IMG/VR virus record: IMGVR_UViG_3300017917_000952
Span: 142,752 to 206,751 of that record
Direction: 5' to 3' (one strand)
DNA length: 64,000 nucleotides
Of the stretch, positions 46,878 through 64,000 are shown one piece after another (positions within the stretch are counted from its first letter, which is position 1; each line of letters starts with the position of its first letter). The notes under the pieces are model-generated. The model did not search any database, had not been told where the DNA came from, and saw only the letters and a program-made list of their open reading frames with translations. Both the position numbers and the translations under genes were made by a program.

Positions 46878-46880
46878 AAT
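46852..46880 (+). promoter_or_regulatory. Sigma70 promoter giving a leaderless primase mRNA
   Basis: TTGACA-17-TAAAAT-5-GTG(46886); the -10 contains the upstream TAA stop. Confidence 0.65.
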
Positions 46881-46885
46881 AAAGT

Positions 46886-47869: not shown

Positions 47870-49328
47870 ACCAAATTATAATTTTGAAATGCAAAAACTG
47901 TACATTGAGATGTTTCTCAGTGATGCAGAGACGTTTATTAGATGTCAGAATATTTTTGATCCTGAGAACTTTGATCAACGGTTACAGCCGGCAGCAGAGT
48001 TCATTACCAAATACGTAGATGAATATAAAGTAATGCCCGAGGCGCAGATTGTAAATGCGTCTACAAGTCAACAATTTGAACCAGTACAACTGCCTAAAGA
48101 AAACTATGACTGGTTGATGGACGAGTTTGAAAACTTCAGTAGGCATAAAGGGCTTGAACGTGCGATTATCAAGAGCAGTGACCTACTTGAAGAAGGTGAC
48201 TACGGTCCTGTTGAAAAACTGATCAAGGATGCTATCCAGATCAGTTTAAACAAGGATATGGGTACTGATTACTTTGCTGATCCTAGAGCCCGACTTGAAA
48301 AATTAAAAAGCAGTAACGGACAGATTAGCACAGGTTGGCCTACTGTTGATAAGAAACTTTATGGTGGGTTCAATCGAGGTGAACTTAATATCTTTGCGGC
48401 TGCGTCGGGCGGTGGTAAATCTTTGTTCTTGGCTAACCTAGGCGTTAACTGGGCATTGATGGGATTGAACGTTATCTATCTAACATTCGAACTTAGCGAA
48501 AACTTAGTTAGTATGCGTCTAGACAGTATGACCACTGGCATTGGTACTAGAGACATTTTCCGAAACATTGACGACGTTGAACTCAAAGTTAAAATGTTGG
48601 AAAAGAAGAGCGGACACCTGCAGATTAAGTATATGCCTTCAGGAAAGAACTGCAACGATATTCGCGCCTATTTGAAAGAATATCAGGTCAAAACCGGCTG
48701 CAAACCAGACGTTTTACTCATCGATTACTTGGATTTGATGATGCCTTTGTCGGTGAAAGTTAGTCCCAGTGATCTGTTTATTAAAGACAAATATGTGTCG
48801 GAAGAGATTCGTAACTTGGCTATGGAAACACAGTGTATCACTGTAACAGCAAGTCAGTTGAACCGTAGTGCCGTTGAAGAAATTGAATTCGATCACAGCC
48901 ATATCTCGGGCGGTCTGTCAAAGATTATGACTGCGGATAACGTGATTGGTATTTTTACTAGCCGTGCTATGAAGGAACGTGGACGCTATCAGATCCAGTT
49001 TATGAAGACACGTTCGTCGTCGGGTGTTGGGCAGAAAGTCGATCTTGAATTTAATGTAGATACCTTGCGTATCAGCGACCTTGGTGAAGACGGAGACTCT
49101 CAACCTAGTTATAATCAGGGCGGCGGTAAGCCGCAGAGTCCTAGTGGTGGAATTTATAGCGGACTAAAGCGAACTAGTACTGTAAGCACTACAACTGATC
49201 CTGAGACTGGCGAAATTATGGAAGTCGATCCGAAGCAGGGCGCGAGTGTTAAATCTCTACAACCTAAGACTGGTGGTGCGCCTTTAATTCGCAGTATGCT
49301 GGATAAACTAAATCCAGAAAAAGATTAA
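47862..49328 (+). CDS. Replicative DNA helicase (gp41/DnaB-like)
   Basis: ASGGGKS, IDYLDL, TASQLNR and K.R motifs. Confidence 0.92.
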   Translation: MNKPNYNFEMQKLYIEMFLSDAETFIRCQNIFDPENFDQRLQPAAEFITKYVDEYKVMPEAQIVNASTSQQFEPVQLPKENYDWLMDEFENFSRHKGLERAIIKSSDLLEEGDYGPVEKLIKDAIQISLNKDMGTDYFADPRARLEKLKSSNGQISTGWPTVDKKLYGGFNRGELNIFAAASGGGKSLFLANLGVNWALMGLNVIYLTFELSENLVSMRLDSMTTGIGTRDIFRNIDDVELKVKMLEKKSGHLQIKYMPSGKNCNDIRAYLKEYQVKTGCKPDVLLIDYLDLMMPLSVKVSPSDLFIKDKYVSEEIRNLAMETQCITVTASQLNRSAVEEIEFDHSHISGGLSKIMTADNVIGIFTSRAMKERGRYQIQFMKTRSSSGVGQKVDLEFNVDTLRISDLGEDGDSQPSYNQGGGKPQSPSGGIYSGLKRTSTVSTTTDPETGEIMEVDPKQGASVKSLQPKTGGAPLIRSMLDKLNPEKD

Positions 49329-50875
49329 TGTCTCAAGTAATTTTATTCTCAGATATCTATAGACCTTTTCACGGAAAAGGCATGGGTGTTTATCGACTTG
49401 CAAATCATATTAGATCTGCAGGTTATTCTGTAAAAGTTATACATGCCTTTATTAATCTAAAAGATCAAGATTTTTATGATATCTGCAAGGAACATATCAG
49501 TGAGCACACCCTTTTAGTAGGGTTAGGTGCTACAGTAATGGCAAACTTAGAACAAAATTTATTTTTTGGAATGCCTACAGATATTGTAAAAGATAGATTC
49601 TTAACTTTAAAGGAAACATATCCGCAGATTGCGACATGTCTAGGGGGCGCCCAGGTTACAGGATCAACTGATGAGTATCTAACTACATTTAATTTTTTCG
49701 ACTATGCAATTAAAGGCCAAGGCGAAACAGCGATAGTCGAATTACTAAATCACTTATCTCAAAAAACTAAAATTAAAACAATTACAATTACTCGACCTAA
49801 AATCATTTCAGATAAACTGTATCCATTTGGCGATTTTAATCAAACAGTTAATACTTATACTGCTGAAGATTGCATTCAATTTGGCGAAGCATTACCAATT
49901 GAGCTTGCCCGGGGATGCATTTTCAAATGTAAGTTTTGCGGTTATGATCTAATCGGAAAAAAATTAGGAGATTTTGTTAAGCCTGCCGATTTAATTAGAC
50001 AAGAACTTTTGCATAATTATGAGAATTGGGGTGTTACTGATTATTATGTTGCAGACGAAACTATAAATGACAGCGAAGAAAAAGTCGAAATGTTATTAGA
50101 AAGTGTTCAAGGATTACCCTTCAAACCGTCGTTCGGCGGCTTTCTAAGATTAGATTTGATTTGGAAATTTCCGGAAATGGCTCAGAAACTTTTAGACTGG
50201 GGCCTCGAGGCATGTAGTTTCGGAATTGAGACTATAAATGATGCAAGCGGCCGGGCAGTTGGGAAGGGATTAGGAAAAGATCGTATAGAATCGACTCTAC
50301 GCCACATTAAAAATGTGTGGGGTGATCGAGTATTTGTTAATGCTAGTTTTATTCTAGGACTTAAACACGATAATCCGGCCACTGCTCCCGAATTAGATCG
50401 TTGGTTAGAACAAATGTATGCAGAAAAATTGCTTCATACCGTTTTTGTTAAACCTCTATATATTATGCCAAAAATTGGGTTGAGTGTACTAGATAAAGAG
50501 TTTGAAGATCATGGATATTCTATTATGACTGATATTGATATAAAGTTAACGTCTGATAGGACACGAACTGTAGTTGAAGATGACTGTATTGCTTGGGAAA
50601 CTCCGAACTATAATTATATTCAGGCATCTCATGATGCCGAAATTATTCATAAAAAATATAATAATCGAAAAATCTTAAAAGGTAAAATAGGTAAGCACAA
50701 TTATGCATTTGTTAAAAGCCTGCTACCTAAGGAACAGCACCGAGACCTGATGTTGAGTCAAATATACGATGTACCTTTTAGTAATCTCTCAAAGGAAGAA
50801 ACAGAAGAGTATATTACTAGGTTAGAACAAGAACATAACTCTCGTTACATCAATATGATTAAAACCAAGCACTGA
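49328..50875 (+). CDS. Radical SAM enzyme with N-terminal B12-binding-like domain
   Basis: RGCIFKCKFC (CxxxCxxC), GG, G.GE and FGIE motifs. Confidence 0.85.
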   Translation: MSQVILFSDIYRPFHGKGMGVYRLANHIRSAGYSVKVIHAFINLKDQDFYDICKEHISEHTLLVGLGATVMANLEQNLFFGMPTDIVKDRFLTLKETYPQIATCLGGAQVTGSTDEYLTTFNFFDYAIKGQGETAIVELLNHLSQKTKIKTITITRPKIISDKLYPFGDFNQTVNTYTAEDCIQFGEALPIELARGCIFKCKFCGYDLIGKKLGDFVKPADLIRQELLHNYENWGVTDYYVADETINDSEEKVEMLLESVQGLPFKPSFGGFLRLDLIWKFPEMAQKLLDWGLEACSFGIETINDASGRAVGKGLGKDRIESTLRHIKNVWGDRVFVNASFILGLKHDNPATAPELDRWLEQMYAEKLLHTVFVKPLYIMPKIGLSVLDKEFEDHGYSIMTDIDIKLTSDRTRTVVEDDCIAWETPNYNYIQASHDAEIIHKKYNNRKILKGKIGKHNYAFVKSLLPKEQHRDLMLSQIYDVPFSNLSKEETEEYITRLEQEHNSRYINMIKTKH

Positions 50876-55971: not shown

Positions 55972-56011
55972 AAAAAAGCACCTGACCACCCTCCCCACCC
56001 TGGCCAGGTGC
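55972..56011 (-). terminator. Intrinsic terminator closing the early region
   Basis: Minus strand GCACCTGGCCA-12-TGGTCAGGTGC-TTTTTT, with one G-U pair that forms only on the minus strand. Confidence 0.8.
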
Positions 56012-56020
56012 CCCCACCGT

Positions 56021-56305
56021 TCAATCTTCTTCAACAACCTCACAGTCCCAGCGTTCGTCTGCAGGGTCGTAGCCTTCTTCTATGAGCTCCTGTACAGCGG
56101 CGTTGAACTCTGACTCAAGGTCCCATACAGCAGCCGCTACACGGATGTCCTTCTTGCGGCGTGCCCGTGCTGTGCCTGCTTGATAGACTAGTGGGTAGTG
56201 ATTGGCACAGTAGCTCTTGCCAGGTAGTGTAGGCTTACCGCAGGCGTGTGTGCCCTCGCCCAAGTAGGTACACTCTGTTACTGCTGTGCGCTTATCGTTG
56301 ATCAT
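56021..56305 (-). CDS. GcrA C-terminal-domain-like Cys3His protein
   Basis: C.Y.G.....CG.....GKSYC..H...VY pattern. Confidence 0.5.
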   Translation of the reverse strand: MINDKRTAVTECTYLGEGTHACGKPTLPGKSYCANHYPLVYQAGTARARRKKDIRVAAAVWDLESEFNAAVQELIEEGYDPADERWDCEVVEED

Positions 56306-56513
56306 TGTTGTTGTCCTTAGTGTCCAATTCAGGGTGACGCTTGCGGTACTCTGCTACTTCCTTCTGTATCTGCTCAATGAGCTCTGCTCGTGTCACGTGC
56401 TCTACACAGACAAATAGAGCCAAGATACACCAAAAGCCCCAAGTGTTCCAGTCCTGCCCAACTGCGTCTAACACTAGACCCAATGTAGCGTATAGCGTTA
56501 GACGCAGTAGCAT
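56292..56513 (-). CDS. Small membrane protein
   Basis: Two hydrophobic segments. Confidence 0.6.
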   Translation of the reverse strand: MLLRLTLYATLGLVLDAVGQDWNTWGFWCILALFVCVEHVTRAELIEQIQKEVAEYRKRHPELDTKDNNNDQR

Positions 56514-56514
56514 A

Positions 56515-57396
56515 TTAGCCTCGCTTCATGCAGGTAGTCTGTGCCATAGCAGTCCAAGCCTTGGGGAATGCCTTACGCAGATCCGCAATCTTGAGCACCA
56601 TACGCAGGCTGAGCTCACGCAGGCGGTCCTTGTTCTTGTTGATGAAGTCCAGGACTTCTTGCACAACAACGGGCTCGAACTCGTAGCGGTCCAACATGCC
56701 CTTTTCCACAATGTTCTTGATCCACAGCATCTTTTCACGCTGGGTGTCCATTTCCAAGTCCATGTAGTGGCAACGGCTTTCCAATGCGTCCAAGTGGCTA
56801 CGCAGTTTCTTGCTACGAACGTGCTCGAACTTAATATTAGTGATGAAGATAGCCGCACCCTTGAACTCAAAGCGGTCCGGAATGCCTTCACTGCGAAGGA
56901 TTCGGCTGTCCGTGTTCCACGAGATGAAGCGACGGTTGCCGCTGTCCAGAGCACCCTTGAGGATGTTCAAGCTCAGTTCTTCCTGCAGGATGTCGTCACA
57001 GTCGTCAAAGACTAGGACATGCTTTGAGTCCGAGAACTCGTAGAGCTTACTGTACAGGCCAATGGAGCTCATGGCACCCTTGACAACTTCGAACTTGGGC
57101 TTGCGTTCGCCCAGAGTATCAAACAGGCCGTCCTTTTGCAGTACTGCCTCCACATTGTGACTTTTACCAACGCCGGGAGGGCCGCTGACAATCATAGCAC
57201 GGACATCGCCACGCTTGACAGCCTTGGTCATCTCAGTGAGGATCTCAAAGCGCTCGTTGAGTCGCTCCAGAATTGCTTCGTCGCTTTCTTTGGCGATGCT
57301 GGCTTCTTTGGCTGCAATTGCATCGGTGTCCAGCTCAATGACGTTGCTGGTAACAGTGGCCTTGCTGGGCTTGCGAGCGGCGGAGGTACGTGCCAT
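56515..57396 (-). CDS. P-loop / AAA+ ATPase
   Basis: GPPGVGKS, VLVFDDCD, IFITN and ALESR motifs. Confidence 0.85.
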   Translation of the reverse strand: MARTSAARKPSKATVTSNVIELDTDAIAAKEASIAKESDEAILERLNERFEILTEMTKAVKRGDVRAMIVSGPPGVGKSHNVEAVLQKDGLFDTLGERKPKFEVVKGAMSSIGLYSKLYEFSDSKHVLVFDDCDDILQEELSLNILKGALDSGNRRFISWNTDSRILRSEGIPDRFEFKGAAIFITNIKFEHVRSKKLRSHLDALESRCHYMDLEMDTQREKMLWIKNIVEKGMLDRYEFEPVVVQEVLDFINKNKDRLRELSLRMVLKIADLRKAFPKAWTAMAQTTCMKRG

Positions 57397-57427
57397 TTGT
57401 GTTCCTTAGTGTGTTGTTGAAGTGTGT

Positions 57428-57456
57428 ATTATACTGTCGAAGGGCCTGTCTGTCAA
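57428..57456 (-). promoter_or_regulatory. Early promoter P1, TTGACA-17-TATAAT, with CA-rich leader and TAAGGA
   Basis: Exact consensus; GAAGGGC/GCCCTTC inverted repeat around the -35. Confidence 0.85.
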
Positions 57457-57473
57457 GCCCTTCTGCACTACAA

Positions 57474-57815
57474 TCAGTCCAGACGCGAACCAGCGTAGGC
57501 TTCGAAGCCATACTTGCGGAACACGTCAGCCGCGGCCTGTGCACCTGCTTCCAGAATGCCCACAGATTGGACGGGCAGTTTGGCAGGGTTCCACAGTTGG
57601 AAGGCCTTGGTGTAGTCTTGACGCACACCAGCGGCTTTCAGCATCTTGCCCAACTTGGTGTTGCCTTTGATCTTGTAGATGTTGGTCCAAGCAAAGCCGC
57701 AGGCATCACGATCACCGTACTTAGCCAGGGCGTCACGAGCAGCCTTGTTGGCTTCTTGCATGGCTTCGGCAACGATTGCGTTCACTTGCTCTTGGGTCAG
57801 GGTCAGTTGGGTCAT
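57474..57815 (-). CDS. Hypothetical early protein (DACGFAW motif)
   Basis: Own promoter and AAGGAG RBS. Confidence 0.75.
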   Translation of the reverse strand: MTQLTLTQEQVNAIVAEAMQEANKAARDALAKYGDRDACGFAWTNIYKIKGNTKLGKMLKAAGVRQDYTKAFQLWNPAKLPVQSVGILEAGAQAAADVFRKYGFEAYAGSRLD

Positions 57816-57847
57816 CTAGTGCTCCTTAGTGCGTTGTTGATGTGTGT

Positions 57848-57876
57848 ATTATACGGGTTTTTGGATGACCCGTCAA
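57848..57876 (-). promoter_or_regulatory. Early promoter P2, TTGACG-17-TATAAT
   Basis: Shared leader ending TAAGGAGCA. Confidence 0.85.
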
Positions 57877-57885
57877 CCACTAAGG

Positions 57886-58101
57886 TTAATCCTTTTTGTT
57901 GGTGATGTGGCTTTTAAACAACAGGCCGCAGAGCAGGCTAAGACCCCAGGCCTGTAGCCAGGTGATCTCCGGGAGCTTGAAGATCGACGGAATCACAGCG
58001 TCCCACAGTAGCATCACGGGCAAGGCCAGCAGGAAGCTCAGGAGTACGATCAGGGCGATGCCTGCGATCACAGTTGCGATGATGGTGCCTAGTGCGTTCA
58101 T
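57886..58101 (-). CDS. Small two-TM membrane protein
   Basis: Hydrophobic; LW....P..F.LP.IT..QA.GL..L motif. Confidence 0.7.
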   Translation of the reverse strand: MNALGTIIATVIAGIALIVLLSFLLALPVMLLWDAVIPSIFKLPEITWLQAWGLSLLCGLLFKSHITNKKD

Positions 58102-58343
58102 TTGCTGACTTTCTTGATCAGTTGGTTGGCCACGGTCATGTCGGAGTTGATGCCGTCATAGCATTGTTCGACGATGCTCATGATCATGAGGTCTACGATG
58201 CTCTTGGCTTCGTTGCGAAGTTTCTTTGTGGGCAGACCGTTGATGAATCGATCAACATCTGCTTTGTCGTTGCAGGCCCAGATGATGTCAGCCAGGACTC
58301 GTTGCTGGGCGTTGAGCCCTTCGATGGTGAACTCTACGCTCAT
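58098..58343 (-). CDS. Hypothetical early protein
   Basis: GAGGAG RBS; ATGA coupling. Confidence 0.7.
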   Translation of the reverse strand: MSVEFTIEGLNAQQRVLADIIWACNDKADVDRFINGLPTKKLRNEAKSIVDLMIMSIVEQCYDGINSDMTVANQLIKKVSK

Positions 58344-58346
58344 TGC

Positions 58347-58544
58347 TTACTCCTCGTTGATCAGGCTAACACCGAACAGGCCCAGCATGGCGCAGGTCAC
58401 TGCGGCACCAGCAAGGGCGAACCACTCTTTGAATCCTGCTTCGGGCGGCAGGTTCTCAACACCGCCAGCGACACCCATGAACCCGATGATGCAGAGGACC
58501 ACTGCCACTGCGCCGATGTTTTTGACCTTTTGCTTGAATTCCAT
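58347..58544 (-). CDS. Small two-TM membrane protein
   Basis: Own promoter and RBS; two hydrophobic segments. Confidence 0.7.
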   Translation of the reverse strand: MEFKQKVKNIGAVAVVLCIIGFMGVAGGVENLPPEAGFKEWFALAGAAVTCAMLGLFGVSLINEE

Positions 58545-58570
58545 TGTGTGCTCCTTGTTGCGATGTATGT

Positions 58571-58599
58571 ATTATAAGGCCGATTGGCCTCAGTGTCAA
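58571..58599 (-). promoter_or_regulatory. Early promoter P3, TTGACA-17-TATAAT
   Basis: The -35 contains the TGA stop of the upstream gene; 28-bp leader identical to P8. Confidence 0.85.
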
Positions 58600-58829
58600 C
58601 CCCAGTTCTTCTTGTCGCCGAACTGTTCGTTGTCACGGTAGCCTGCGGTGTAGGCTGCGATTTCTTCTGCGGTCATGCAGGCCATCTCAACCCGCGGGCT
58701 GGTCATCGTTGCACCCACATAGAAGTGAGGGTTGAAAGGACGGCCGTAGTAGGAATCGGCACTGCCACGATCGTAAGGGCCACCGTGGCGTTCATCATAG
58801 CCCGCTTTGTTCATCTCTTGCATCAGCAT
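58596..58829 (-). CDS. Hypothetical early protein (HGGPYDRGSADSYY motif)
   Basis: Own promoter and RBS. Confidence 0.75.
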   Translation of the reverse strand: MLMQEMNKAGYDERHGGPYDRGSADSYYGRPFNPHFYVGATMTSPRVEMACMTAEEIAAYTAGYRDNEQFGDKKNWG

Positions 58830-58857
58830 CTCTGCTCCTTTGTGTGTCTATGTGTGT

Positions 58858-58886
58858 ATTATACGATCAAAACGGCACGTCGTCAA
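58858..58886 (-). promoter_or_regulatory. Early promoter P4, TTGACG-17-TATAAT
   Basis: The -35 is encoded by the F-D-D codons of the upstream gene. Confidence 0.8.
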
Positions 58887-59097
58887 ACTCGTATTGTTCG
58901 TCGTACCAGTTGTCGTTGGTCTGGGGCGTCAGGACCGTGTCAACATGAACGGTGCCCAGGCTTTGCAGTTCCTGGATCTCCTGCTTGATTTCAGCACGGC
59001 GGGCATCAATCTTAGCATTGGACTCAGGGTCCAGTTCGCCAGCGATCTCGTCCAGGTAGATCAGTTCTTCGTACAGGTTGTTGATCTCGTCTTGCAT
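58867..59097 (-). CDS. Acidic early protein with SSB-Ct-like tail (EFDDVPF)
   Basis: Own promoter and RBS; C-terminus resembles bacterial SSB DFDDDIPF. Confidence 0.7.
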   Translation of the reverse strand: MQDEINNLYEELIYLDEIAGELDPESNAKIDARRAEIKQEIQELQSLGTVHVDTVLTPQTNDNWYDEQYEFDDVPF

Positions 59098-59123
59098 CGT
59101 GTGCTCCTTGTTGTGATGTGTGT

Positions 59124-59153
59124 ATTATACACTCGCAATGGCTGACAGAGCAA
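59124..59153 (-). promoter_or_regulatory. Early promoter P5, TTGCTC-18-TATAAT
   Basis: The -10 contains the TAA stop of the upstream gene; shared leader. Confidence 0.7.
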
Positions 59154-59238
59154 CCATAATCCAGATGGCAATCAGTTGAGCGATGCCAAAGTAGAACATG
59201 GCCCAAACCACTGTACAAAAACCAATGATCTTCAACAT
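59125..59238 (-). CDS. 37-aa membrane peptide (MLKIIGFC...IASV)
   Basis: TAAGGAG RBS; entirely hydrophobic; 3' part of ORF 59125..59427. Confidence 0.6.
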   Translation of the reverse strand: MLKIIGFCTVVWAMFYFGIAQLIAIWIMVALSAIASV

Positions 59239-59248
59239 CGTGCTCTCC

Positions 59249-59563
59249 TTAGCGGCAGACTTGACCGTAGAACTGACCTTGCTGGGTGTAGAGGGGGAAG
59301 CAACCGTTGGGCGCAGGGTAGGCAGGGCTATACTGCGGCAGGGTGCGAACTTCGGGCTGTTGGTACACAGGCGCAGGCAGGGTCTGCGTCTGTTGATAGA
59401 CAACCTGCGGCTGAGGCTGAACAACAACCTGCGGGCGGCTCATCTGTTGGTAGATCCAGTAGCCTGCAACACCAGCCAGGGCGCCTTGTTCACGGGGACC
59501 CCAAGCCAGTGCAGAACCTGTGGCTGTGATTGCGATCAAACCTGCTACGATTGCCTTTTTCAT
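59249..59563 (-). CDS. Secreted/periplasmic Pro-Gln-rich protein
   Basis: Signal peptide MKKAIVAGLIAITATGSALA; own promoter and RBS. Confidence 0.7.
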   Translation of the reverse strand: MKKAIVAGLIAITATGSALAWGPREQGALAGVAGYWIYQQMSRPQVVVQPQPQVVYQQTQTLPAPVYQQPEVRTLPQYSPAYPAPNGCFPLYTQQGQFYGQVCR

Positions 59564-59594
59564 CTTGAGCTCCTTTTTCGCTGTCGATGTGTGT

Positions 59595-59623
59595 ATTATA
59601 CGGCCGTTGGAAAAACCTGTCAA
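59595..59623 (-). promoter_or_regulatory. Early promoter P6, TTGACA-17-TATAAT
   Basis: Exact consensus; upstream AACCCT motif. Confidence 0.85.
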
Positions 59624-59626
59624 CCT

Positions 59627-59971
59627 TTAGGGTTGTTGTTTTTCTGCCACATGCTTGCACTGACCGCGGAACTTGAACCCAGGACAGGTACAGGACCAAA
59701 CGCCATCTTCTTCAGTGAGGTAATACTTCTCGCCACGACTGCCCTCTACGGTGATCACGCCCGGGTCCACGGTTGGAGTGCCTTCTTCAAGCTCAACAAA
59801 GGTCCTGCCTCGCGTGTCGAGCTTCAAGGGGTTCTTGAACTTGAACAACTTCTTAGAACCTCTGGGCACATAGGCCACAGCCTGCGTCATCGAGTCGTTC
59901 ATCACGTAGACGTGGTTGCAGTTCTGACCAAAGCCGTCAGTCCAAGTAGTGGTCTCAAGCATTATCTTCAT
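59627..59971 (-). CDS. SWIM zinc-finger protein (leaderless)
   Basis: WSCTCPGF.FR..CKHV motif; ATG 6 nt after TATAAT. Confidence 0.8.
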   Translation of the reverse strand: MKIMLETTTWTDGFGQNCNHVYVMNDSMTQAVAYVPRGSKKLFKFKNPLKLDTRGRTFVELEEGTPTVDPGVITVEGSRGEKYYLTEEDGVWSCTCPGFKFRGQCKHVAEKQQP

Positions 59972-59977
59972 GACTGT

Positions 59978-60006
59978 ATTATACGGTCAATCGATCTGGA
60001 TGTCAA
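59978..60006 (-). promoter_or_regulatory. Early promoter P7, TTGACA-17-TATAAT-6-ATG (leaderless)
   Basis: The -35 lies inside the V-D codons of the upstream gene. Confidence 0.8.
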
Positions 60007-60172
60007 CCAAGCGGCCTTCGCGGAAGATGAAGTATTCGTTGATCATGCCGTAGTAGGCCCAGATGCAGTCGTTGCCCGGGACCAGGGTGTAGCTCTTGAT
60101 CCCTCGCTTTTCATAGTGCTCTGCAACCAGAAGGACTTCCAGTTCGTTTAGGCTAGGGTCAATTCGGATCAT
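59987..60172 (-). CDS. Hypothetical early protein
   Basis: 61 aa; ATGA coupling. Confidence 0.65.
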   Translation of the reverse strand: MIRIDPSLNELEVLLVAEHYEKRGIKSYTLVPGNDCIWAYYGMINEYFIFREGRLVDIQID

Positions 60173-60384
60173 GCTCGCTCCATCATTCTCATCAGTTCAT
60201 TGTGCAGGTAGCCCATTTCCTCGTGCTCCACATAGAAGTCAGTACGGGGATCCCAGTAGCGACCTTCCTTCGGATCGTAGTACAGAACACGACCACCTGC
60301 GAACACGAACGGTCCTTCGAGGCCTTTGCGTGGGCCGTAGCCCTGGAGCAGTTCTTCCGTCTTACCAAGCACCTTGTATCCCAT
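60169..60384 (-). CDS. Hypothetical early protein (GLEGPF...LYYDPKEG.Y.DP.TD motif)
   Basis: Own promoter and RBS. Confidence 0.75.
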   Translation of the reverse strand: MGYKVLGKTEELLQGYGPRKGLEGPFVFAGGRVLYYDPKEGRYWDPRTDFYVEHEEMGYLHNELMRMMERA

Positions 60385-60410
60385 AGTCTGCTCCTTGTTG
60401 CGATGTATGT

Positions 60411-60439
60411 ATTATATCACCAATTGGAGTGCCTGTCAA
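60411..60439 (-). promoter_or_regulatory. Early promoter P8, TTGACA-17-TATAAT
   Basis: The -35 and spacer lie in the upstream coding sequence; its stop abuts the -10. Confidence 0.85.
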
Positions 60440-60764
60440 CCTCTTCTTGCGTGAATTGCCCGCCGCTACGGTCGGGATTTGCGGCCCAACTCTCCTGCAA
60501 TCTGCGCTCGCGCTCTGCTTCGTGCTTAGGGTCAATGTAGGCACTGTCCAGCAAGAGTTGATAGGCCAACTTCTCCAGGTTTGAGGGCATGTCGCCCATG
60601 GCTACACGGTTAGGAATCCGCTCCAGTTCGTCGATGCACTTCTGCACGAAGTCCACATGCATCTCAATGCCCACACTGTGCATAGGACGAAGCAGAACGA
60701 CGGGAGCAGTGCCCTTGGGTTGCAGGTTAGCCCTAAGGCGTTGGATGATGTCTTGGTCTTTCAT
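60417..60764 (-). CDS. Hypothetical early protein
   Basis: 115 aa; C-terminal SW..NPDRSGGQFT.EE motif. Confidence 0.65.
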   Translation of the reverse strand: MKDQDIIQRLRANLQPKGTAPVVLLRPMHSVGIEMHVDFVQKCIDELERIPNRVAMGDMPSNLEKLAYQLLLDSAYIDPKHEAERERRLQESWAANPDRSGGQFTQEEVDRHSNW

Positions 60765-60925
60765 ACGTTCACCTGTAAGACAACAGTTTCGTCGTCGTAT
60801 TCGTTAGCCTCGAAGTGATCCACCTGCTCTACATCGTAGATCTCTCCGCCCATGTTGTCATTAACTTCGACCAAGCAATCCTGCGGCATGGTCTTCAGGA
60901 TCTTGATCAGTTCTGCTACAGTCAT
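60761..60925 (-). CDS. 54-aa acidic hypothetical protein (MTVAELIKIL...), not in the ORF track
   Basis: Manually translated open frame; AAGGA RBS; ATGA coupling. Confidence 0.65.
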   Translation of the reverse strand: MTVAELIKILKTMPQDCLVEVNDNMGGEIYDVEQVDHFEANEYDDETVVLQVNV

Positions 60926-60926
60926 T

Positions 60927-61115
60927 TCAACGGTCCTTCAGTCGCTTCATGACCTTGAGCAGGTCGGGGTTGTTTTTGATCTTCTCCATAGCAGCCTCTT
61001 GCCGCTCCCACAGCAGGCGCTCGGCTTCAGTTTCCAGATTGTTGGCATAGTGGCCGTTGCCGCGATTCTGATCCTGCTTCTGCCACTTTGCGATCTGCTT
61101 CTTGGAAACTTTCAT
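60927..61115 (-). CDS. Hypothetical early protein
   Basis: Start MKVSKK after AAGGAGCA and promoter P9. Confidence 0.7.
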   Translation of the reverse strand: MKVSKKQIAKWQKQDQNRGNGHYANNLETEAERLLWERQEAAMEKIKNNPDLLKVMKRLKDR

Positions 61116-61142
61116 CGTCTGCTCCTTGCTGTCTATGTGTGT

Positions 61143-61184
61143 ATTATACCTTCTTTTGGATAACCCGTCAACCAAACGGGTTAT
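61143..61184 (-). promoter_or_regulatory. Early promoter P9, TTGACG-17-TATAAT, with 9-bp inverted repeat ATAACCCGT/ACGGGTTAT
   Basis: Repeat arms at 61160-68 and 61176-84. Confidence 0.85.
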
Positions 61185-61309
61185 TCGCTCCAAACGGGTT
61201 CGAAGGTGTAGCCCTTTTGCTGATAGTAGAGTCCATCGAAACTCTGCCAATCGCGGATGGGGATTACCAGTCCCAACTCTACTACACGGTAAGCAACAAT
61301 CGTCTTCAT
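61181..61309 (-). CDS. 42-aa hypothetical protein (leaderless)
   Basis: TATAAT-ACACAC-ATG; MKTIVAYR... Confidence 0.6.
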   Translation of the reverse strand: MKTIVAYRVVELGLVIPIRDWQSFDGLYYQQKGYTFEPVWSE

Positions 61310-61315
61310 GTGTGT

Positions 61316-61345
61316 ATTATACAGTCTCTTTGGCAGTTTGGACAA
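61316..61345 (-). promoter_or_regulatory. Early promoter P10, TTGTCC-18-TATAAT-6-ATG (leaderless)
   Basis: The -10 contains the upstream TAA stop. Confidence 0.7.
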
Positions 61346-61457
61346 CCGAATTGTCAAACAATGTGCCACCGTAGGCCTGCTGGAATGTCTGGGCAGTGGC
61401 CAGCAGGTAGAACTGATAGACGCGGCCGGTAGGAGTGATCAGTGTGTACTTCATCAT
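61317..61457 (-). CDS. 46-aa hypothetical protein (MMKYTLITPTGRVYQFY...), not in the ORF track
   Basis: Manually translated; TAATG overlap with the upstream gene; ends in the P10 -10 box. Confidence 0.6.
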   Translation of the reverse strand: MMKYTLITPTGRVYQFYLLATAQTFQQAYGGTLFDNSVVQTAKETV

Positions 61458-61641
61458 TACTTCTCGATTTTAACGCAAATGGGGGTCTTGATGTTCATGC
61501 CCCAGCGGAGATCGTCAACGGCCTTGTAGACAACCTTAGCGGCTGCTTCGCACTTTTCTTTAGTAGTGTGAACTCAGGGCCCATGTTCCAGTTGCTACCA
61601 GTGCCTACTACAATCATGACCCAAACAACCATTGCGTTCAT
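61457..61641 (-). pseudogene. Small exported/membrane protein gene with a frameshift near 61566-61570
   Basis: Removing 2 nt (AC) joins MNAMVV...GPEF to TTKEKCEAAAK...ICVKIEK*, whose stop overlaps the next ATG. Confidence 0.6.
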
Positions 61642-61668
61642 CGTGTGCTCCTTACTGTCTATGCATGT

Positions 61669-61711
61669 ATTATAACACCGTTTTGGATAACCCGTCAACC
61701 ACTAGGGTTAT
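61669..61711 (-). promoter_or_regulatory. Early promoter P11, TTGACG-18-TATAAT, with ATAACCC-11-GGGTTAT
   Basis: 21 bp identical to P9. Confidence 0.8.
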
Positions 61712-61717
61712 AGAGTC

Positions 61718-61751
61718 AAAAGAATAGGGCGGCTCTCCCGAGCGGCCCTAT
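61718..61751 (-). terminator. Intrinsic terminator with GGGA tetraloop
   Basis: ATAGGGC-C-GCTC-GGGA-GAGC-C-GCCCTAT-TCTTTT. Confidence 0.75.
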
Positions 61752-61823
61752 CCAACACTAACACGGCTGAGGGAGCAACTCAACCGGCCCGGGACACTAC
61801 CCCCGGGACTTCGGAGCAACCAA
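61718..61823 (-). ncRNA. Candidate structured 3'-UTR/small RNA with two GUUGCUCC anti-SD motifs
   Basis: Three hairpins, two with G-U pairs that form only on the minus strand; no ORF; ends in a terminator. Confidence 0.4.
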
Positions 61824-62093
61824 TTAAGCGAGGCCTAACTGGATGGCACGGTAACCAGCGGCAACAACACGACGGCTGGGCATACCGATTTCATATTCGG
61901 TAACAGTAACACCATTACCAGCCTTGCGAGTGTTTGCATAAACAGCATAACCTGCTTGACGGATACGGCTTGCCTCTGCGGCAACGTTCTTGATACCGAA
62001 ACGCTTCTGTGCTTCAGAAGCAGTAACTTTCTCACCACTCTTCAATGCGGTCAGCATCTTGAATGTCTTTGTACCTTGATTGATCTTCAACAT
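61824..62093 (-). CDS. Winged helix-turn-helix DNA-binding protein
   Basis: L.AL.SG...T..EA..RFG..N..A..S.IR..GY pattern; CAAGGA RBS. Confidence 0.75.
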   Translation of the reverse strand: MLKINQGTKTFKMLTALKSGEKVTASEAQKRFGIKNVAAEASRIRQAGYAVYANTRKAGNGVTVTEYEIGMPSRRVVAAGYRAIQLGLA

Positions 62094-62109
62094 TTTCTTT
62101 TCCTTGTTT

Positions 62110-62162
62110 TTAGACTGCTGTGCAGTTGATATAATAGTACAGCAGTCTAAGGTCAAGGTCAA
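62110..62162 (-). promoter_or_regulatory. Promoter P12 (TTGACC-17-TACTAT) with 12-bp perfect inverted repeat TTAGACTGCTGT/ACAGCAGTCTAA, operator-like
   Basis: Arms at 62110-21 and 62139-50 flank the -10 and start site; the -35 contains the upstream TGA. Confidence 0.7.
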
Positions 62163-62377
62163 GCATCAATCTTGCCAAATTCTTTTTGTGTGTAGTATTG
62201 GTTTAACCTACGCTGAATCATCGTAAGCAGATCACCGTGATCGTCCGAAACAATGAATCGGACAGGGCAACGGCCCCAGGTGTTGTGCTTGACGAATTCA
62301 AAATACCATTTGCGGTGCTGACGATTCGTCTCGTCAAAAGCCACCCAAGGTCTACCAACGAATGCTAATCTGCTCAT
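62159..62377 (-). CDS. Hypothetical protein (RP.V.FD..N..HR...W..CPVRF motif)
   Basis: GGAG RBS. Confidence 0.7.
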   Translation of the reverse strand: MSRLAFVGRPWVAFDETNRQHRKWYFEFVKHNTWGRCPVRFIVSDDHGDLLTMIQRRLNQYYTQKEFGKIDA

Positions 62378-62467
62378 CTGTTTGCTCCAGTGAATATCCC
62401 GCTGTATTGTGTAGATACCCGGTCTTACGGCACTCTGGCCCGCCGGGCGCCTTCACACGGCAGTAAC

Positions 62468-62884
62468 TTAGAACGGAGCGTCTTCCAGTTGTGCTTCGAC
62501 TTCAGCCTTGGAAACAACAGTTTCTTTGACAGCGGTCTTAGCCTTAGCAGCCTTGGCCTTTGCCTTGATAGCGTCCATAGACGGCTTGGACTTCTTGGCA
62601 GGAGCCTTGGCCTTAGGTGCAGCCTTAGCAGCCTTAGGGGTCTCGGTGCGCTTCTCAACCTCTGCTTCGATAGCGGCACGAACTGCGGCATTGCCGTTGT
62701 CAAAGTTGATCTGAAGCAGGAATGCCACAGCCTCGTCTTTGGTCATCGGATGCTTGAGCTCGATGATATCAATGTCCTTGTGGCCGTTCTTGGCCAGGAC
62801 CTTAACACGCATCTGATCATTAGCAAAGCGAGCCTTGATCTTGCCGTTGAGAGTAGAAACACCTGCGAACTTGAATGTAGACAT
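62468..62884 (-). CDS. Protein with histone-H1-like Ala/Lys/Pro tail ending LEDAPF
   Basis: AKAAPKAKAPAKK repeats; AAGGAG RBS. Confidence 0.75.
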   Translation of the reverse strand: MSTFKFAGVSTLNGKIKARFANDQMRVKVLAKNGHKDIDIIELKHPMTKDEAVAFLLQINFDNGNAAVRAAIEAEVEKRTETPKAAKAAPKAKAPAKKSKPSMDAIKAKAKAAKAKTAVKETVVSKAEVEAQLEDAPF

Positions 62885-62944
62885 GAAAATCTCCTTGTGT
62901 GTATGTCTGTGAATGTCTGCGTCATTACCTAACGCATTAATAAT

Positions 62945-62973
62945 AGTTTAACGTCTTTGGACAGGTTTGTCAA
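62945..62973 (-). promoter_or_regulatory. Promoter P13, TTGACA-17-TAAACT; leader has a 5' hairpin
   Basis: Leader hairpin UGCGUUA-5-UGACGCA followed by a CA-rich tract. Confidence 0.7.
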
Positions 62974-62983
62974 CCAAAATGTG

Positions 62984-63169
62984 TCAAGAGTTTAGTGTGT
63001 TGTATGGGCTAAGTTCATCCTCCTGTGGCGAATCTGCCACACCAAAACTTTCCAGAACCTCGAGCACCGTTTCGATTGGGCAGTTCAGTTCTGCGGCAAT
63101 CCGTTTGGCACTCAGGCCGTCAATGTACAGTTGTTCAATGTCGTACAGTAGCTCTGCAACCTTGCTCAT
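62984..63169 (-). CDS. Small HTH-like protein
   Basis: G.SA..IA..L.CP...V..V pattern. Confidence 0.6.
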   Translation of the reverse strand: MSKVAELLYDIEQLYIDGLSAKRIAAELNCPIETVLEVLESFGVADSPQEDELSPYNTLNS

Positions 63170-63552
63170 TCTTCGTTCTCCATTGCTTGAAACTCAAAAG
63201 CCTCGCTCAGCAGTCCGTCAAACTCACCGTAGAACTCCACGTACCAACGGCCGTCGCGACGCAGGATATAGTTGTATTCTTCGAACTGGCCGTTCTTGCG
63301 ATAGTCAGCATAGTCCTTAAACATACGCTGAGGGCAGTCCTCGCCGCGTTCCTTGTAGAACTCACAGCCGTCAACGGTCTCGCTCAGCGTAGACATGTCG
63401 CCGTTGTCCAGCAGTTCGCGGACTTCGAACGGATCGGTGTAGGCATTCAGCAGGATCTTGCCGTTGTGATCCAGGTAGCCATCCCAGTGGCAGTAGATTT
63501 GACCCACGGTACCGTCTGCGTATTCCAGGGCGATCATGCTTCGTGTTGCCAT
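63166..63552 (-). CDS. Hypothetical phage early protein (M.TRS.I...YCHWDGY family)
   Basis: Own promoter and RBS. Confidence 0.75.
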   Translation of the reverse strand: MATRSMIALEYADGTVGQIYCHWDGYLDHNGKILLNAYTDPFEVRELLDNGDMSTLSETVDGCEFYKERGEDCPQRMFKDYADYRKNGQFEEYNYILRRDGRWYVEFYGEFDGLLSEAFEFQAMENEE

Positions 63553-63586
63553 TTGCGTTGCTCCTTAGTGCGTTGTCGATGTGCTA

Positions 63587-63615
63587 ATTATACAGTGGTT
63601 TTACCAACCTGTCAA
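63587..63615 (-). promoter_or_regulatory. Early promoter P14, TTGACA-17-TATAAT
   Basis: Leader shares 18 bp with P2. Confidence 0.85.
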
Positions 63616-63619
63616 CCAA

Positions 63620-63763
63620 TTACTTGGCCTTTTTGGCGGGCTTCTGCTTGGCTTCCTGGGCAGCAATCTTGCCACTGTAGGCACTGCCGGCCTTGTGGAT
63701 CAGACCAGTCTTGGTGAAAGTGATAGTGCCGCCAGTGCTAGAAGGAATAGTTTTGCCGATCAT
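63620..63763 (-). CDS. 47-aa basic hypothetical protein
   Basis: Start MIGKT after GGAGCA and P15. Confidence 0.65.
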   Translation of the reverse strand: MIGKTIPSSTGGTITFTKTGLIHKAGSAYSGKIAAQEAKQKPAKKAK

Positions 63764-63794
63764 TGTGTGCTCCAATTGCGTTGTTGATGTGTGT

Positions 63795-63823
63795 ATTATA
63801 GCAGGACTTCTAAGCCCTGTCAA
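63795..63823 (-). promoter_or_regulatory. Early promoter P15, TTGACA-17-TATAAT
   Basis: Exact consensus; TAACCCTAG motif upstream. Confidence 0.85.
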
Positions 63824-63832
63824 CTACTAGGG

Positions 63833-64000
63833 TTAATCTAGCAGGCACTTGACCACAATAGCAGGGCCGTAGGCCCAAGGACCATTACCGCCATCAGTGA
63901 CCTTGACATTCTCAGCGCCTGCGGCCTTTTGCAGAGCGATAAGCAGATTGGTGTTGTTGCGGAAGTAGCACTTGACACGGCGCTCCGTGCCAGTGTGGGC
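63833..64000 (-). CDS. 3' part of a hypothetical protein running off the window edge
   Basis: Open frame ...RRVKCYF...KCLLD*; its stop is the TAA of the TAACCC motif. Confidence 0.55.
   Translation of the reverse strand, partial: AHTGTERRVKCYFRNNTNLLIALQKAAGAENVKVTDGGNGPWAYGPAIVVKCLLD

What the first reader, a model, noticed from the sequence alone, without database searches (positions are those of the whole stretch)
58571..62162. Promoters written into the C-termini and stop codons of upstream genes
Seen: the TGA stop lies inside the -35 at P3 (GGT TGA CA) and P12 (GCT TGA CC). The TAA stop lies inside the -10 at P5 and P10 (GTA TAA T). The -35 is encoded by terminal codons at P4 (TTT GAC G), P7 and P8 (GTT GAC A). 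The primase promoter (46852-80) is built the same way. Inference: incoming ORFs are captured by recombination at the promoter repeat and borrow its sequence as their terminus, so each gene carries the next gene's promoter.
Basis: partly seen in the sequence, partly recalled or inferred. Interest (0 to 1): 0.6.

Follow-up and report, generated by a model that had tools for sequence, protein, structure and literature searches.

The report
Phage promoters overlapping upstream gene ends
In the early-gene region of an uncultured T4-related jumbo phage, about half of the strong host-type promoters are written over the last codons or the stop codon of the preceding gene; this is mostly tight packing laid over pre-existing protein ends, not protein ends copied from promoters.

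Summary
Fifteen near-consensus sigma-70 promoters lie on the minus strand between 57428 and 63823. Seven overlap the preceding gene exactly as described: TGA inside the -35 (P3, P12), TAA inside the -10 (P5, P10), and the -35 encoded by the last codons (P4, P7, P8). The primase promoter is built the same way.

I compared more than 160 related metagenomic phage loci. For six of the seven genes, and for the gene upstream of primase, the C-terminal residues are conserved in homologues that have no promoter there, or are conserved family-wide. Those ends are therefore not borrowed. In g15 the promoter-encoded residues form a confident terminal beta-strand.

Only g13 has a lineage-specific, low-confidence 24-residue tail that runs into a promoter. 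A few relatives show similar promoter-encoded tails.

Selection for the promoter shows at silent sites, for example GAC 53 versus GAT 3 at one Asp codon. Some genes keep their 3' promoter while the downstream gene changes. However, gene order breaks as often at promoter-free junctions as at promoter junctions.

The closest known system is the PeSL promoter cassettes of T4-type phages. This is a more compact variant, with about 6% of promoter-driven genes apparently leaderless. Interest is moderate.

The parts
57428..57456 (-). P1: TTGACA-17-TATAAT before g25 (NrdC.10-like AAA ATPase). No overlap: the g24 stop lies 17 nt upstream. A strong hairpin flanks the -35.
   Evidence: hairpin -20.2 kcal/mol, z -5.8
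57848..57876 (-). P2: TTGACG-17-TATAAT. The g23 stop lies 9 nt upstream. Hairpins are present.
58571..58599 (-). P3: TTGACA-17-TATAAT. The g20 stop, TGA 58596-58598, is bases 2-4 of the -35.
58596..58829 (-). g20 (77 aa). Its C-terminus GDKKNWG is conserved in promoter-free homologues.
58858..58886 (-). P4: TTGACG-17-TATAAT. The -35 and most of the spacer are encoded by the last 6 codons of g19, and TGA lies 3 nt before the -10.
58867..59097 (-). g19 (76 aa). Its acidic/aromatic C-terminal motif also occurs in other proteins at promoter-free junctions.
59124..59153 (-). P5: weak -35 TTGCTC, 18-nt spacer, TATAAT. The g18 stop, TAA 59125-59127, is bases 3-5 of the -10.
59125..59238 (-). g18 (37 aa, hydrophobic). 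Homologues end the same way with no promoter after them.
59595..59623 (-). P6: consensus promoter. The g16 stop lies 3 nt upstream of the -35.
59978..60006 (-). P7: consensus promoter inside the last 7 codons of g15. The next gene, g16, starts 6 nt after the -10 and is probably leaderless.
59987..60172 (-). g15 (61 aa). Its C-terminal LVDIQID is conserved in 21 homologues and is modelled as the terminal beta-strand.
60411..60439 (-). P8: consensus promoter inside the last 7 codons of g13. The stop TGA 60417-60419 abuts the -10 and acts as an extended -10 TGn.
60417..60764 (-). g13 (115 aa). The conserved core ends near residue 91, followed by a lineage-specific 24-residue tail that runs into P8.
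61143..61171 (-). P9: TTGACG-17-TATAAT. The g10 stop lies 9 nt upstream. A 10-bp hairpin spans the -35.
   Evidence: (z -3.0)
61181..61309 (-). g10 (42 aa). Its ATG lies 6 nt after the P10 -10, so it is probably leaderless. Together with P9 it is absent from L111 and L112, where g9 is followed directly by g11.
61316..61345 (-). P10: weak -35 TTGTCC, 18-nt spacer, TATAAT. The g9 stop, TAA 61317-61319, is bases 3-5 of the -10.
61317..61457 (-). g9 (45-46 aa). Its C-terminus, and the TAA inside the -10, are conserved in homologues.
61669..61698 (-). P11: TTGACG-18-TATAAT. It follows a structured terminator region and has no upstream gene overlap.
62134..62162 (-). P12: TTGACC-17-TACTAT before the winged-helix gene g7. 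The g6 stop, TGA 62159-62161, lies inside the -35.
62159..62377 (-). g6 (72 aa). In 24 of 27 homologues the last codon ends in T and is followed by TGA, while the last residue varies.
62945..62973 (-). P13: TTGACA-17-TAAACT. The g4 stop lies 8 nt upstream, inside a chance second TTGACA.
63587..63615 (-). P14: consensus promoter. The g2 stop lies 4 nt upstream.
63795..63823 (-). P15: consensus promoter. The upstream ORF runs off the contig end.
46852..46880 (+). Primase promoter: TTGACA-17-TAAAAT. The -35 is encoded by F-D-K of the upstream ORF (46038-46877), and that ORF's TAA is bases 1-3 of the -10. The primase GTG at 46886 lies 5 nt after the -10. The arrangement is conserved in 59 of 60 distinct relatives.

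Best explanation
The region is the hyperplastic early-gene region of a T4-related jumbo phage. It is transcribed by the host sigma-70 RNA polymerase from a repeated, near-consensus promoter placed before almost every one to three small genes.

The genes are packed so tightly that about 40-50% of promoters overlap the preceding ORF. The consensus makes this cheap. TTGACA contains TGA in one frame, reads (V/L/I/F)-Asp in the second frame and Leu-Thr in the third. TATAAT contains TAA in one frame.

In most cases the protein end is older than, or independent of, the overlap. Either the promoter abuts the natural stop so that only the stop triplet is shared, or the promoter has been overprinted on conserved C-terminal codons by silent or conservative changes. 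The promoter then constrains wobble positions and the last codon (shown). Where the protein constrains the -35 (P5, P10), the -35 is weak.

In a minority of cases an ORF that lost its own stop reads on into the next promoter and gains a short, disordered, promoter-encoded tail. This is shown for g13 and for some relatives.

A gene plus its 3' promoter can then move as a unit in front of different downstream genes. The co-occurrence is shown; the movement mechanism is inferred.

In a second class of junctions the start codon sits 5-6 nt after the -10, so the transcript would start at the start codon (inferred, leaderless).
For: Promoters:
- 17 sites, all on the coding strand, against 5.9 expected.
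- Fixed distance to SD and ATG.
- The nearest cultured relative, PA5oct, has 32 putative TTGAC/TATAATA promoters identified around its transcription start sites (PMC7318152).

T4-type context: a Gp23 capsid protein and an NrdC.10-like g25.

Overlap is general: 278 of 710 promoter junctions in 62 non-redundant relatives overlap, 121 of them in the T-TGA-CA register.

Protein ends are independent of the promoter. Median extra C-terminal length in overlapping members is 0 across 23 families. The g15 model has pLDDT 95, with residues 54-60 forming the last strand of a sheet.

Selection on the promoter inside coding DNA:
- The Asp codon in the primase-upstream gene is GAC 53 versus GAT 3, against a genome GAC share of 0.42 (nominal p 4e-17). 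In one search the rows that read GAT are the ones where the overlapping promoter is flagged absent (L146) or sits after the stop (L119, L187).
- The g15 Val codon is GTT in 18 of 20, against a 29% background. The 2 GTA codons belong to L008 and L035, which lack the promoter.
- The g6 last codon ends in T in 24 of 27, with 10 different last residues.

Tail class: the g13 core ends near residue 91 in 148 homologues, while the window's tail is unique and has pLDDT about 50. The L081 tail is a whole promoter read in frame.

Module behaviour: 20 distinct g15-family contexts are followed by 14 different downstream gene families.
Against: - There are no transcription-start data for this phage.
- My gene calls and promoter calls in relatives are heuristic.
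- The relatives are phylogenetically non-independent, so the p-values are only indicative.
- For g15, g9, g6 and the primase-upstream gene, the promoter-bearing state is the majority state. A very old promoter-derived origin of the end, later built into the fold, cannot be excluded.
- P5 and P10 have poor -35 hexamers and may be weak or inactive.
Confidence: 0.72

Rival explanations
1. Incoming ORFs are captured by homologous recombination within the promoter repeat, lose their own ends, and take promoter sequence as their C-terminus and stop.
For: - The g13 tail.
- Promoter-encoded tails in L081, L089 and L053/L022.
- g10 plus P9 is an indel flanked by the repeated -10/ACACACAT block relative to L111 and L112.
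- Gene order around promoters is highly shuffled.
- PeSL precedent in T4-type phages (PMC2839356).
Against: - Six of the seven overlapping genes in the window, and the primase-upstream gene, keep the same C-terminal residues in promoter-free or relocated-promoter homologues.
- Median C-terminal extension is 0 in 23 families.
- The g15 end is a structural strand.
- Adjacency is lost as often at promoter-free junctions: 0.209 versus 0.237, p 0.26.
- The left junction of the g10 indel lies at the start codon, not in a repeat.
Confidence: 0.15
2. The overlap is itself regulatory. Translation termination or read-through transcription across the embedded promoter modulates firing of the next promoter (promoter occlusion or coupling), and that is why the arrangement is conserved.
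For: - The exact register is conserved over many relatives: g6, g9, g15 and the primase junction.
- Overlapping promoters lack the hairpins seen at non-overlapping ones, so upstream transcripts would read through.
Against: - Ribosomes act on RNA and RNA polymerase acts on DNA, so a shared triplet needs no functional link.
- The same families tolerate promoters moved a few nt downstream of the stop.
- No expression data are available.
Confidence: 0.08
3. The overlaps are chance matches. The hexamers inside coding sequence are not used as promoters.
For: P5 and P10 have weak -35 hexamers. TGA and TAA are expected to occur in AT-rich hexamers.
Against: - Full 12/12 or 11/12 matches at P3, P4, P7 and P8, with the conserved downstream leader and SD.
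- Silent-site and last-codon conservation.
- Loss of GAC or GTT coincides with loss or relocation of the -10.
Confidence: 0.04

Closest known systems
PeSLs (promoter-early stem-loops) of T4-type phages (Arbiol et al. 2010, PMC2839356; Comeau et al. 2014, PMC4122927)
   Same: Both are repeated strong sigma-70-like early promoters. Both flank small, mostly orphan ORFs in hyperplastic regions of a T4-related genome (Gp23, NrdC.10 homologue). Some copies here have stem-loops overlapping the -35 or lying in the spacer (P1, P2, P3, P9, P15). Gene order is heavily shuffled between relatives.
   Different: In the published PeSL figure, upstream stop codons lie in an AT-rich stretch before the -35. Here 39-47% of promoters overlap the upstream ORF, and those copies lack a stem-loop. 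Terminator function is not evident. Synteny breaks are not enriched at promoters. The region is GC-richer than the rest of the genome, not AT-rich.
Putative TTGAC / TATAATA promoters around transcription start sites in Pseudomonas jumbo phage PA5oct (PMC7318152)
   Same: PA5oct is the nearest cultured relative by helicase and NrdC.10-like ATPase (about 50-54% identity). It has the same -35 and extended TATAATA -10 motif and depends on the host polymerase.
   Different: The text retrieved calls these motifs intergenic. A search of that paper for 'stop codon' and 'leaderless' found no occurrence, so overlap with upstream coding ends or stop codons is apparently not discussed there.
Internal or overlapping promoters and overprinting in compact phage and bacterial genomes (general knowledge, not tested here)
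   Same: Regulatory signals are embedded in the 3' end of the upstream gene, and dual constraints act on the same bases.
   Different: Here the arrangement is systematic (hundreds of junctions, 62 or more gene families), has a preferred register (T-TGA-CA), and is conserved for individual genes across a large uncultured lineage.
Leaderless mRNAs such as lambda cI from PRM (general knowledge)
   Same: The start codon sits about 6 nt after the -10, so the transcript would begin at the start codon (g10, g16, primase).
   Different: It is predicted only. It includes GTG starts for an essential replication gene and is conserved in 59 of 60 relatives. Translational re-initiation from the upstream ORF is an alternative.

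Membership tests
Sigma-70 (housekeeping) promoter | -35 TTGACA and -10 TATAAT hexamers separated by 16-18 bp | tested here: met
   Seven sites match 12/12 and four match 11/12. All lie on the coding strand.
Sigma-70 (housekeeping) promoter | Transcription initiates 6-8 nt downstream of the -10 | not testable with these tools
The only support comes from the relative PA5oct.
PeSL cassette (T4-type phages) | Strong sigma-70-like early promoter repeated between small ORFs of a hyperplastic region in a T4-related genome | tested here: met
   15 promoters in 6.4 kb. Gp23 capsid, NrdC.10-like ATPase, shuffled gene order in relatives.
PeSL cassette (T4-type phages) | Associated stable stem-loop acting as terminator or attenuator | tested here: inconclusive
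   Hairpins are clearly better than shuffles at P1 (z -5.8), P9 (-3.0) and P2 (-2.5). Hairpins at P3, P14 and P15 are weak. None is seen at five of the seven overlapping promoters (P5, P7, P10, P12 z > -0.2; P4, P8 about -1.5). No T-tracts follow. Terminator activity was not tested.
PeSL cassette (T4-type phages) | Upstream stop codon lies before the -35 in an AT-rich stretch | tested here: not met
   7 of 15 promoters in the window and 278 of 710 in relatives overlap the upstream ORF. The region is 50-53% GC.
PeSL cassette (T4-type phages) | Recombination between copies causes indels or replacements of ORFs (breakpoints inside the element) | tested here: inconclusive
   One indel (g10 + P9) has its right end in the repeated -10 block. 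Adjacency loss does not differ between promoter and promoter-free junctions. No near-identical genome pair was available to map breakpoints.
Leaderless mRNA gene | Start codon at the predicted transcription start (5-7 nt after the -10), with no Shine-Dalgarno sequence | tested here: met
   g10, g16 and primase. In relatives the -10-to-start distance has a sharp peak at 6 nt (40 junctions, against 2 each at 7 and 8) beside the 25-32 nt SD class. The primase spacing is conserved in 59 of 60.
Leaderless mRNA gene | Mapped 5' end coincides with the start codon | not testable with these tools
   No reads were available.

The most novel reading that the evidence does not exclude
In this uncultured T4-related jumbo-phage lineage, the unit of early-gene evolution may not be the classical promoter-plus-ORF cassette. 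It may instead often be an ORF that hosts, within its own conserved last codons or stop, the promoter for whatever gene comes next. This includes promoters that produce leaderless transcripts, even for the primase. Promoter DNA would also occasionally be recruited as new C-terminal peptide sequence. That would be a systematic, selected dual-coding architecture distinct from PeSLs, not just incidental crowding.
Probability: 0.3. Interest if true: 0.6.

Novelty: new variant of a known kind. Interest (0 to 1): 0.4.

Why it matters
1. Annotation. Gene callers and promoter finders that assume promoters are intergenic will miss about 40% of early promoters in this abundant, uncultured phage group. 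They will also mis-set starts of leaderless genes, including the primase.

2. Evolution. The data give a clean natural example of dual coding. Promoter constraints are visible at silent sites and in the choice of the last codon. Protein constraints weaken -35 hexamers. There are also rare cases where promoter DNA becomes a protein tail.

3. PeSL idea. The results qualify it: repeated promoters accompany cassette shuffling here, but they are not demonstrably the preferred breakpoints.

None of this overturns known principles. Overlap of signals with coding sequence in compact phage genomes is expected.

Tried and rejected
- Megablast of the region against phage records found no match.
- Pfam and PHROGs on the seven overlapping genes found no family. 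The only hits were SWIM in g16 and HTH_39 in g7.
- The search for related loci with g13 alone found no relative. With g9 the query was too short. Both were solved with the word-index protein search instead.
- Rfam on 52-64 kb found no family, and no tRNA was found.
- My first length-greedy gene caller mis-called g20 and g21. I replaced it with a codon-usage scorer.
- I considered that g4's TGA inside an upstream TTGACA marks a second promoter. I rejected this because relatives have TGA-TACA or similar there, so it is a chance match.
- My first idea was that TAA-in--10 promoters cannot have a consensus -35 for frame reasons. That holds only for a 17-nt spacer. P5 and P10 use 18 nt, and their weak -35 is instead dictated by conserved residues (V-A-L, V-V-Q).
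- A literature search for earlier descriptions of stop codons inside -35 or -10 hexamers gave nothing specific.
- Complex prediction, the search of protein representatives and the atlas search were not needed.

Full report
**Context.** The window is the last 64 kb of a 206,751-bp IMG/VR virus contig. The contig is linear and CheckV estimates it as 58% complete. It encodes a T4-type Gp23 capsid protein, a DnaB-like helicase and a DnaG-like primase. Its nearest cultured relatives are the PA5oct group of Pseudomonas jumbo phages, at about 50-54% protein identity. Most of the genome is about 40% GC. The last 8 kb of the window is 50-53% GC, and all genes there are on the minus strand. The AAA ATPase g25 (56515-57396) is a homologue of T4-group NrdC.10.

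**Checking the observation.** The exact motif TTGAC-N18-TATAAT occurs ten times on the minus strand between 57428 and 63823. Allowing one mismatch gives 14 matches in the window against 1.9 expected. The consensus scan gives 17 promoter-like sites in 56-64 kb, all on the minus strand, against 5.9 +/- 2.5 in shuffles. Anchoring on the -10 gives 15 promoters, P1 to P15. They share a downstream block (TATAAT-ACACACAT..), a Shine-Dalgarno sequence and an ATG 25-32 nt further on.

- TGA inside the -35 at P3 (g20) and P12 (g6).
- TAA as bases 3-5 of the -10 at P5 (g18) and P10 (g9).
- The -35 encoded by the last codons at P4 (g19), P7 (g15) and P8 (g13).
- At P8 the TGA abuts the -10 and supplies the TG of an extended -10.
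- The primase promoter at 46852-46880 has its -35 encoded by F-D-K of the upstream ORF. That ORF's TAA forms the first three bases of the -10.

The other eight promoters have the upstream stop 3-17 nt before the -35, or follow a terminator.

**Relatives.** A search with g25 returned 80 of at least 586 related viral contigs, each with up to 10 kb of the homologous cassette region. Most small genes of the window have homologues there. Further sets came from g13, g19, g9, g10 and the primase. Gene order is a semi-conserved frame (g2-g3-g4-g5-g6-g7 ... g24-g25-g26-g27) filled with shuffled small genes.

**Is the overlap general?**
- In a first pass over about 600 distinct promoter contexts, the upstream stop lay before the -35 in 313, in the -35 in 130, in the spacer in 126 and in the -10 in 19. 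The largest single peak (113) was the T-TGA-CA register.
- I then used a codon-usage gene caller on 62 non-redundant loci. Of 710 promoter junctions, 432 did not overlap. In 127 the stop was in the -35 (121 in the T-TGA-CA register, from 62 gene families). In 125 it was in the spacer (50 families), in 7 in the -10 and in 19 beyond it.
- The window is therefore typical of its lineage.

- **g20 (P3).** Homologues end GDKK(D/N/E)W(G/D/L/R) whether a promoter follows, a promoter sits some bases further on, or the next gene starts directly with no promoter (L036, L012, L025, L022 and others). Only the stop is shared.
- **g18 (P5).** All nine distinct homologue contexts end ..IAGV or ..ASI and are followed directly by the next gene, with no promoter.
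- **g15 (P7).** LVDIQID is conserved in all 21 distinct homologue contexts, nearly always with GTT GAC as the -35 and TGA-nnn-TATAAT. The downstream gene differs from locus to locus. Four homologues have lost or moved the promoter (CAT GAC in L042; GTA GAC with no -10 in L008 and L035; no -10 in L069) and keep the same residues. A model built from 22 sequences has pLDDT 95.4 and places residues 54-60 as the last strand of a sheet.
- **g19 (P4).** The motif NDNWYDEQYE-(L/F)-(N/D)-D also ends other, otherwise unrelated proteins at promoter-free junctions (L107-L110). At most the last two or three residues are new.
- **g9 (P10).** 47 homologues, nearly all 45 residues, keep the end. The DNA contexts fetched keep TAA inside TATAAT.
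- **g6 (P12).** 24 of 27 homologues have NNT-TGA in the -35, and the last residue varies among ten amino acids.
- **Primase junction.** 59 of 60 distinct relatives keep the arrangement. L119 and L187 keep ..DKLLYRS, but with GAT and with a separate promoter after the stop.
- **g22 family.** This shows the reverse case. Most members encode the -35 as (L/I)-D-K. The window's copy ends QLIKKVSK at the same length and has no promoter.
- **Overall.** Across 23 families with both states, overlapping members are longer by a median of 0 residues (mean 0.9).

**The exception.** The g13 family has 148 homologues, mostly 91-97 residues. Its conserved core ends near residue 91, and the ends after that differ in length and sequence.
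- The window's protein has a unique 24-residue tail whose last seven codons are the P8 -35 and spacer. In the model the tail has pLDDT about 50, against 84-91 for the core.
- In L081 the tail FWLTSNSDRAIITT is an entire promoter read in the stop-free frame (TTG ACC ... ATA ATA).
- In L089 a long tail ends on TAA in a -10.
- Two g22-family members (L053, L022) read R-L-T-G-L through a -35.

Promoter-derived tails therefore exist but are the minority. Five of the 23 families show an excess of 2.7 residues or more.

**Evidence that the embedded promoters are under selection.**
- In the gene upstream of primase, the Asp codon inside the -35 is GAC in 53 relatives and GAT in 3, against a genome-wide GAC share of 0.42 (nominal p 4e-17; the relatives are not independent). 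The rows that read GAT there are the ones where the overlapping promoter is flagged absent (L146) or lies after the stop (L119, L187).
- The g15 Val codon is GTT in 18 of 20, against a 29% background. The two GTA codons are in L008 and L035, which have no promoter there.
- The g6 last codon ends in T in 24 of 27, against a 28.5% background.
- Conversely, at P5 and P10 conserved residues (V-A-L, V-V-Q) occupy the -35 position. The hexamers there are only TTGCTC and TTGTCC at 18 nt.

**Does each gene carry the next gene's promoter, and is recombination at promoters the cause?**
- For g15, g9, g6, the g22 family and the primase-upstream gene, the promoter stays with the upstream gene while downstream genes vary.
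- Lineage-wide, promoter presence follows the downstream gene more strongly (0.78) than the upstream gene (0.67). The baseline is 0.56.
- Neighbour conservation is equally low at promoter junctions (0.237) and promoter-free junctions (0.209), p = 0.26. Over whole loci the difference was small: 0.216 versus 0.271.
- One indel fits repeat-mediated exchange on one side. In L111 and L112, g9's embedded promoter drives g11. In the window, g10 plus promoter P9 lies between them, bounded by the repeated TATAAT-ACACACAT block. Elsewhere g10 keeps a similar 3' promoter but is joined on its 5' side to another gene by an ATGA overlap. The left junction in the window is therefore at the start codon, not in a repeat.

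I conclude that shuffling happens at gene boundaries in general. Promoter repeats may contribute, but they are not shown to be the preferred sites.

**Comparison with known systems.** The closest known system is the PeSL of T4-type phages. PeSLs are repeated sigma-70-like early promoters with stem-loops, found in hyperplastic regions and proposed and partly shown to mediate modular shuffling (PMC2839356, PMC4122927). In the published description, upstream stop codons lie in an AT-rich stretch before the -35. Here hairpins clearly better than shuffles occur at P1, P9 and P2, with weaker ones at P3, P14 and P15, while five of the seven overlapping promoters have none. The region is GC-rich relative to the genome, and 39-47% of promoters overlap coding sequence. 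PA5oct has 32 putative TTGAC/TATAATA promoters identified around transcription start sites and described as intergenic motifs. I therefore file this as a compact variant of a known kind.

**Leaderless class.** The distance from the -10 to the start codon is bimodal in relatives. There is a sharp peak at 6 nt (40 junctions; 2 each at 7 and 8) and a broad Shine-Dalgarno class at 25-32 nt. My caller gave a bonus to starts 4-8 nt after a -10, but that cannot explain the sharpness of the peak. In the window, g10, g16 and the primase belong to the 5-6 nt class: ATG at 6 nt for g10 and g16, and GTG 5 nt after the -10 for primase. In relatives the primase start is ATG or GTG at 5-6 nt in 59 of 60. Re-initiation after the upstream TAA, 8-9 nt away, is an alternative for primase.

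**Limits.** No transcript data could be obtained. Promoters, starts and gene calls in relatives are predictions. The counts come from related sequences, so the statistics are descriptive. The order of events (protein end first or promoter first) is inferred from minority promoter-free homologues and from one structure model, not from dated trees.

**Verdict.** This is a new, more compact variant of T4-type promoter cassettes, with conserved dual coding and a leaderless subclass. Interest is moderate.

Noticed in passing
window 59969-59983, 61307-61321, 46875-46888: g16, g10 and the primase have their start codon 5-6 nt after a -10 hexamer and no Shine-Dalgarno sequence, so they are probably leaderless. 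In relatives the -10-to-start distance has a sharp peak at exactly 6 nt (40 junctions). The primase arrangement, often with a GTG start, is conserved in 59 of 60 relatives.
   Followed up: partly
window 62093-62150 (minus strand), gene g7 61824-62093: An 11-bp inverted repeat (TAGACTGCTGT / ACAGCAGTCTA) brackets the -10 of P12, and a short ACTGC-N3-GCAGT palindrome lies at the predicted start. Homologues keep the palindrome with paired changes (ACTGT..ACAGT). The gene behind it is a winged-helix protein (Pfam HTH_39), so this may be an autoregulated operator.
   Followed up: partly
window 61699-61830 (minus strand): A 125-nt non-coding gap after g7 folds into three GC-rich hairpins (-54.9 kcal/mol, z -2.6). 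The last hairpin is followed by a U-rich run, which suggests a terminator. It is the only clear terminator-like element in the cassette array. There was no Rfam match.
   Followed up: partly
window 56000-64000 versus the rest of the genome: The early cassette region is 50-53% GC, while the other 200 kb of the contig is about 40% GC. In relatives the contrast is much smaller (46% versus 44%), so it is particular to this phage. The cause is unknown.
   Followed up: partly
window 58867-58920 (g19 C-terminus); L107-L110 about 1501-1560: The acidic/aromatic motif NDNWYDEQYE(L/F)(N/D)D ends proteins with unrelated N-terminal parts in different phages. It looks like a portable C-terminal interaction tail.
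   Followed up: no
window 61495-61641 (g8): The ORF behind the good promoter P11 has a very low coding score (5.2) and no homologue in 80 related loci. It may be a decayed gene or a mis-called frame.
   Followed up: no
window 62378-62467: A 90-nt gap between g5 and g6 has no promoter. A gap of more than 20 nt is present at this junction in nearly all relatives shown (one has a short gap). It may be a conserved RNA or regulatory element. There was no Rfam match.
   Followed up: no
window 62468-62884 (g5): A conserved 138-residue protein with a Lys/Ala/Pro-rich, histone-H1-like C-terminal half. It has no Pfam or PHROG family and is part of the conserved frame g3-g4-g5-g6-g7.
   Followed up: no
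window 63833-64000 and the contig end: The cassette array runs off the end of the contig. Relatives carry another 5-10 kb of promoter-plus-small-gene cassettes upstream. CheckV rates the record 58% complete, and a relative's contig is 354,680 bp long.
   Followed up: partly
window 49328-50875: A B12-binding radical-SAM protein is encoded next to the replication genes.
   Followed up: no
L194 182-805 and L195 196-819: In two short metagenomic contigs the g10 homologue lies two genes downstream of a protein with a Gad2 domain (PF26128).
   Followed up: no
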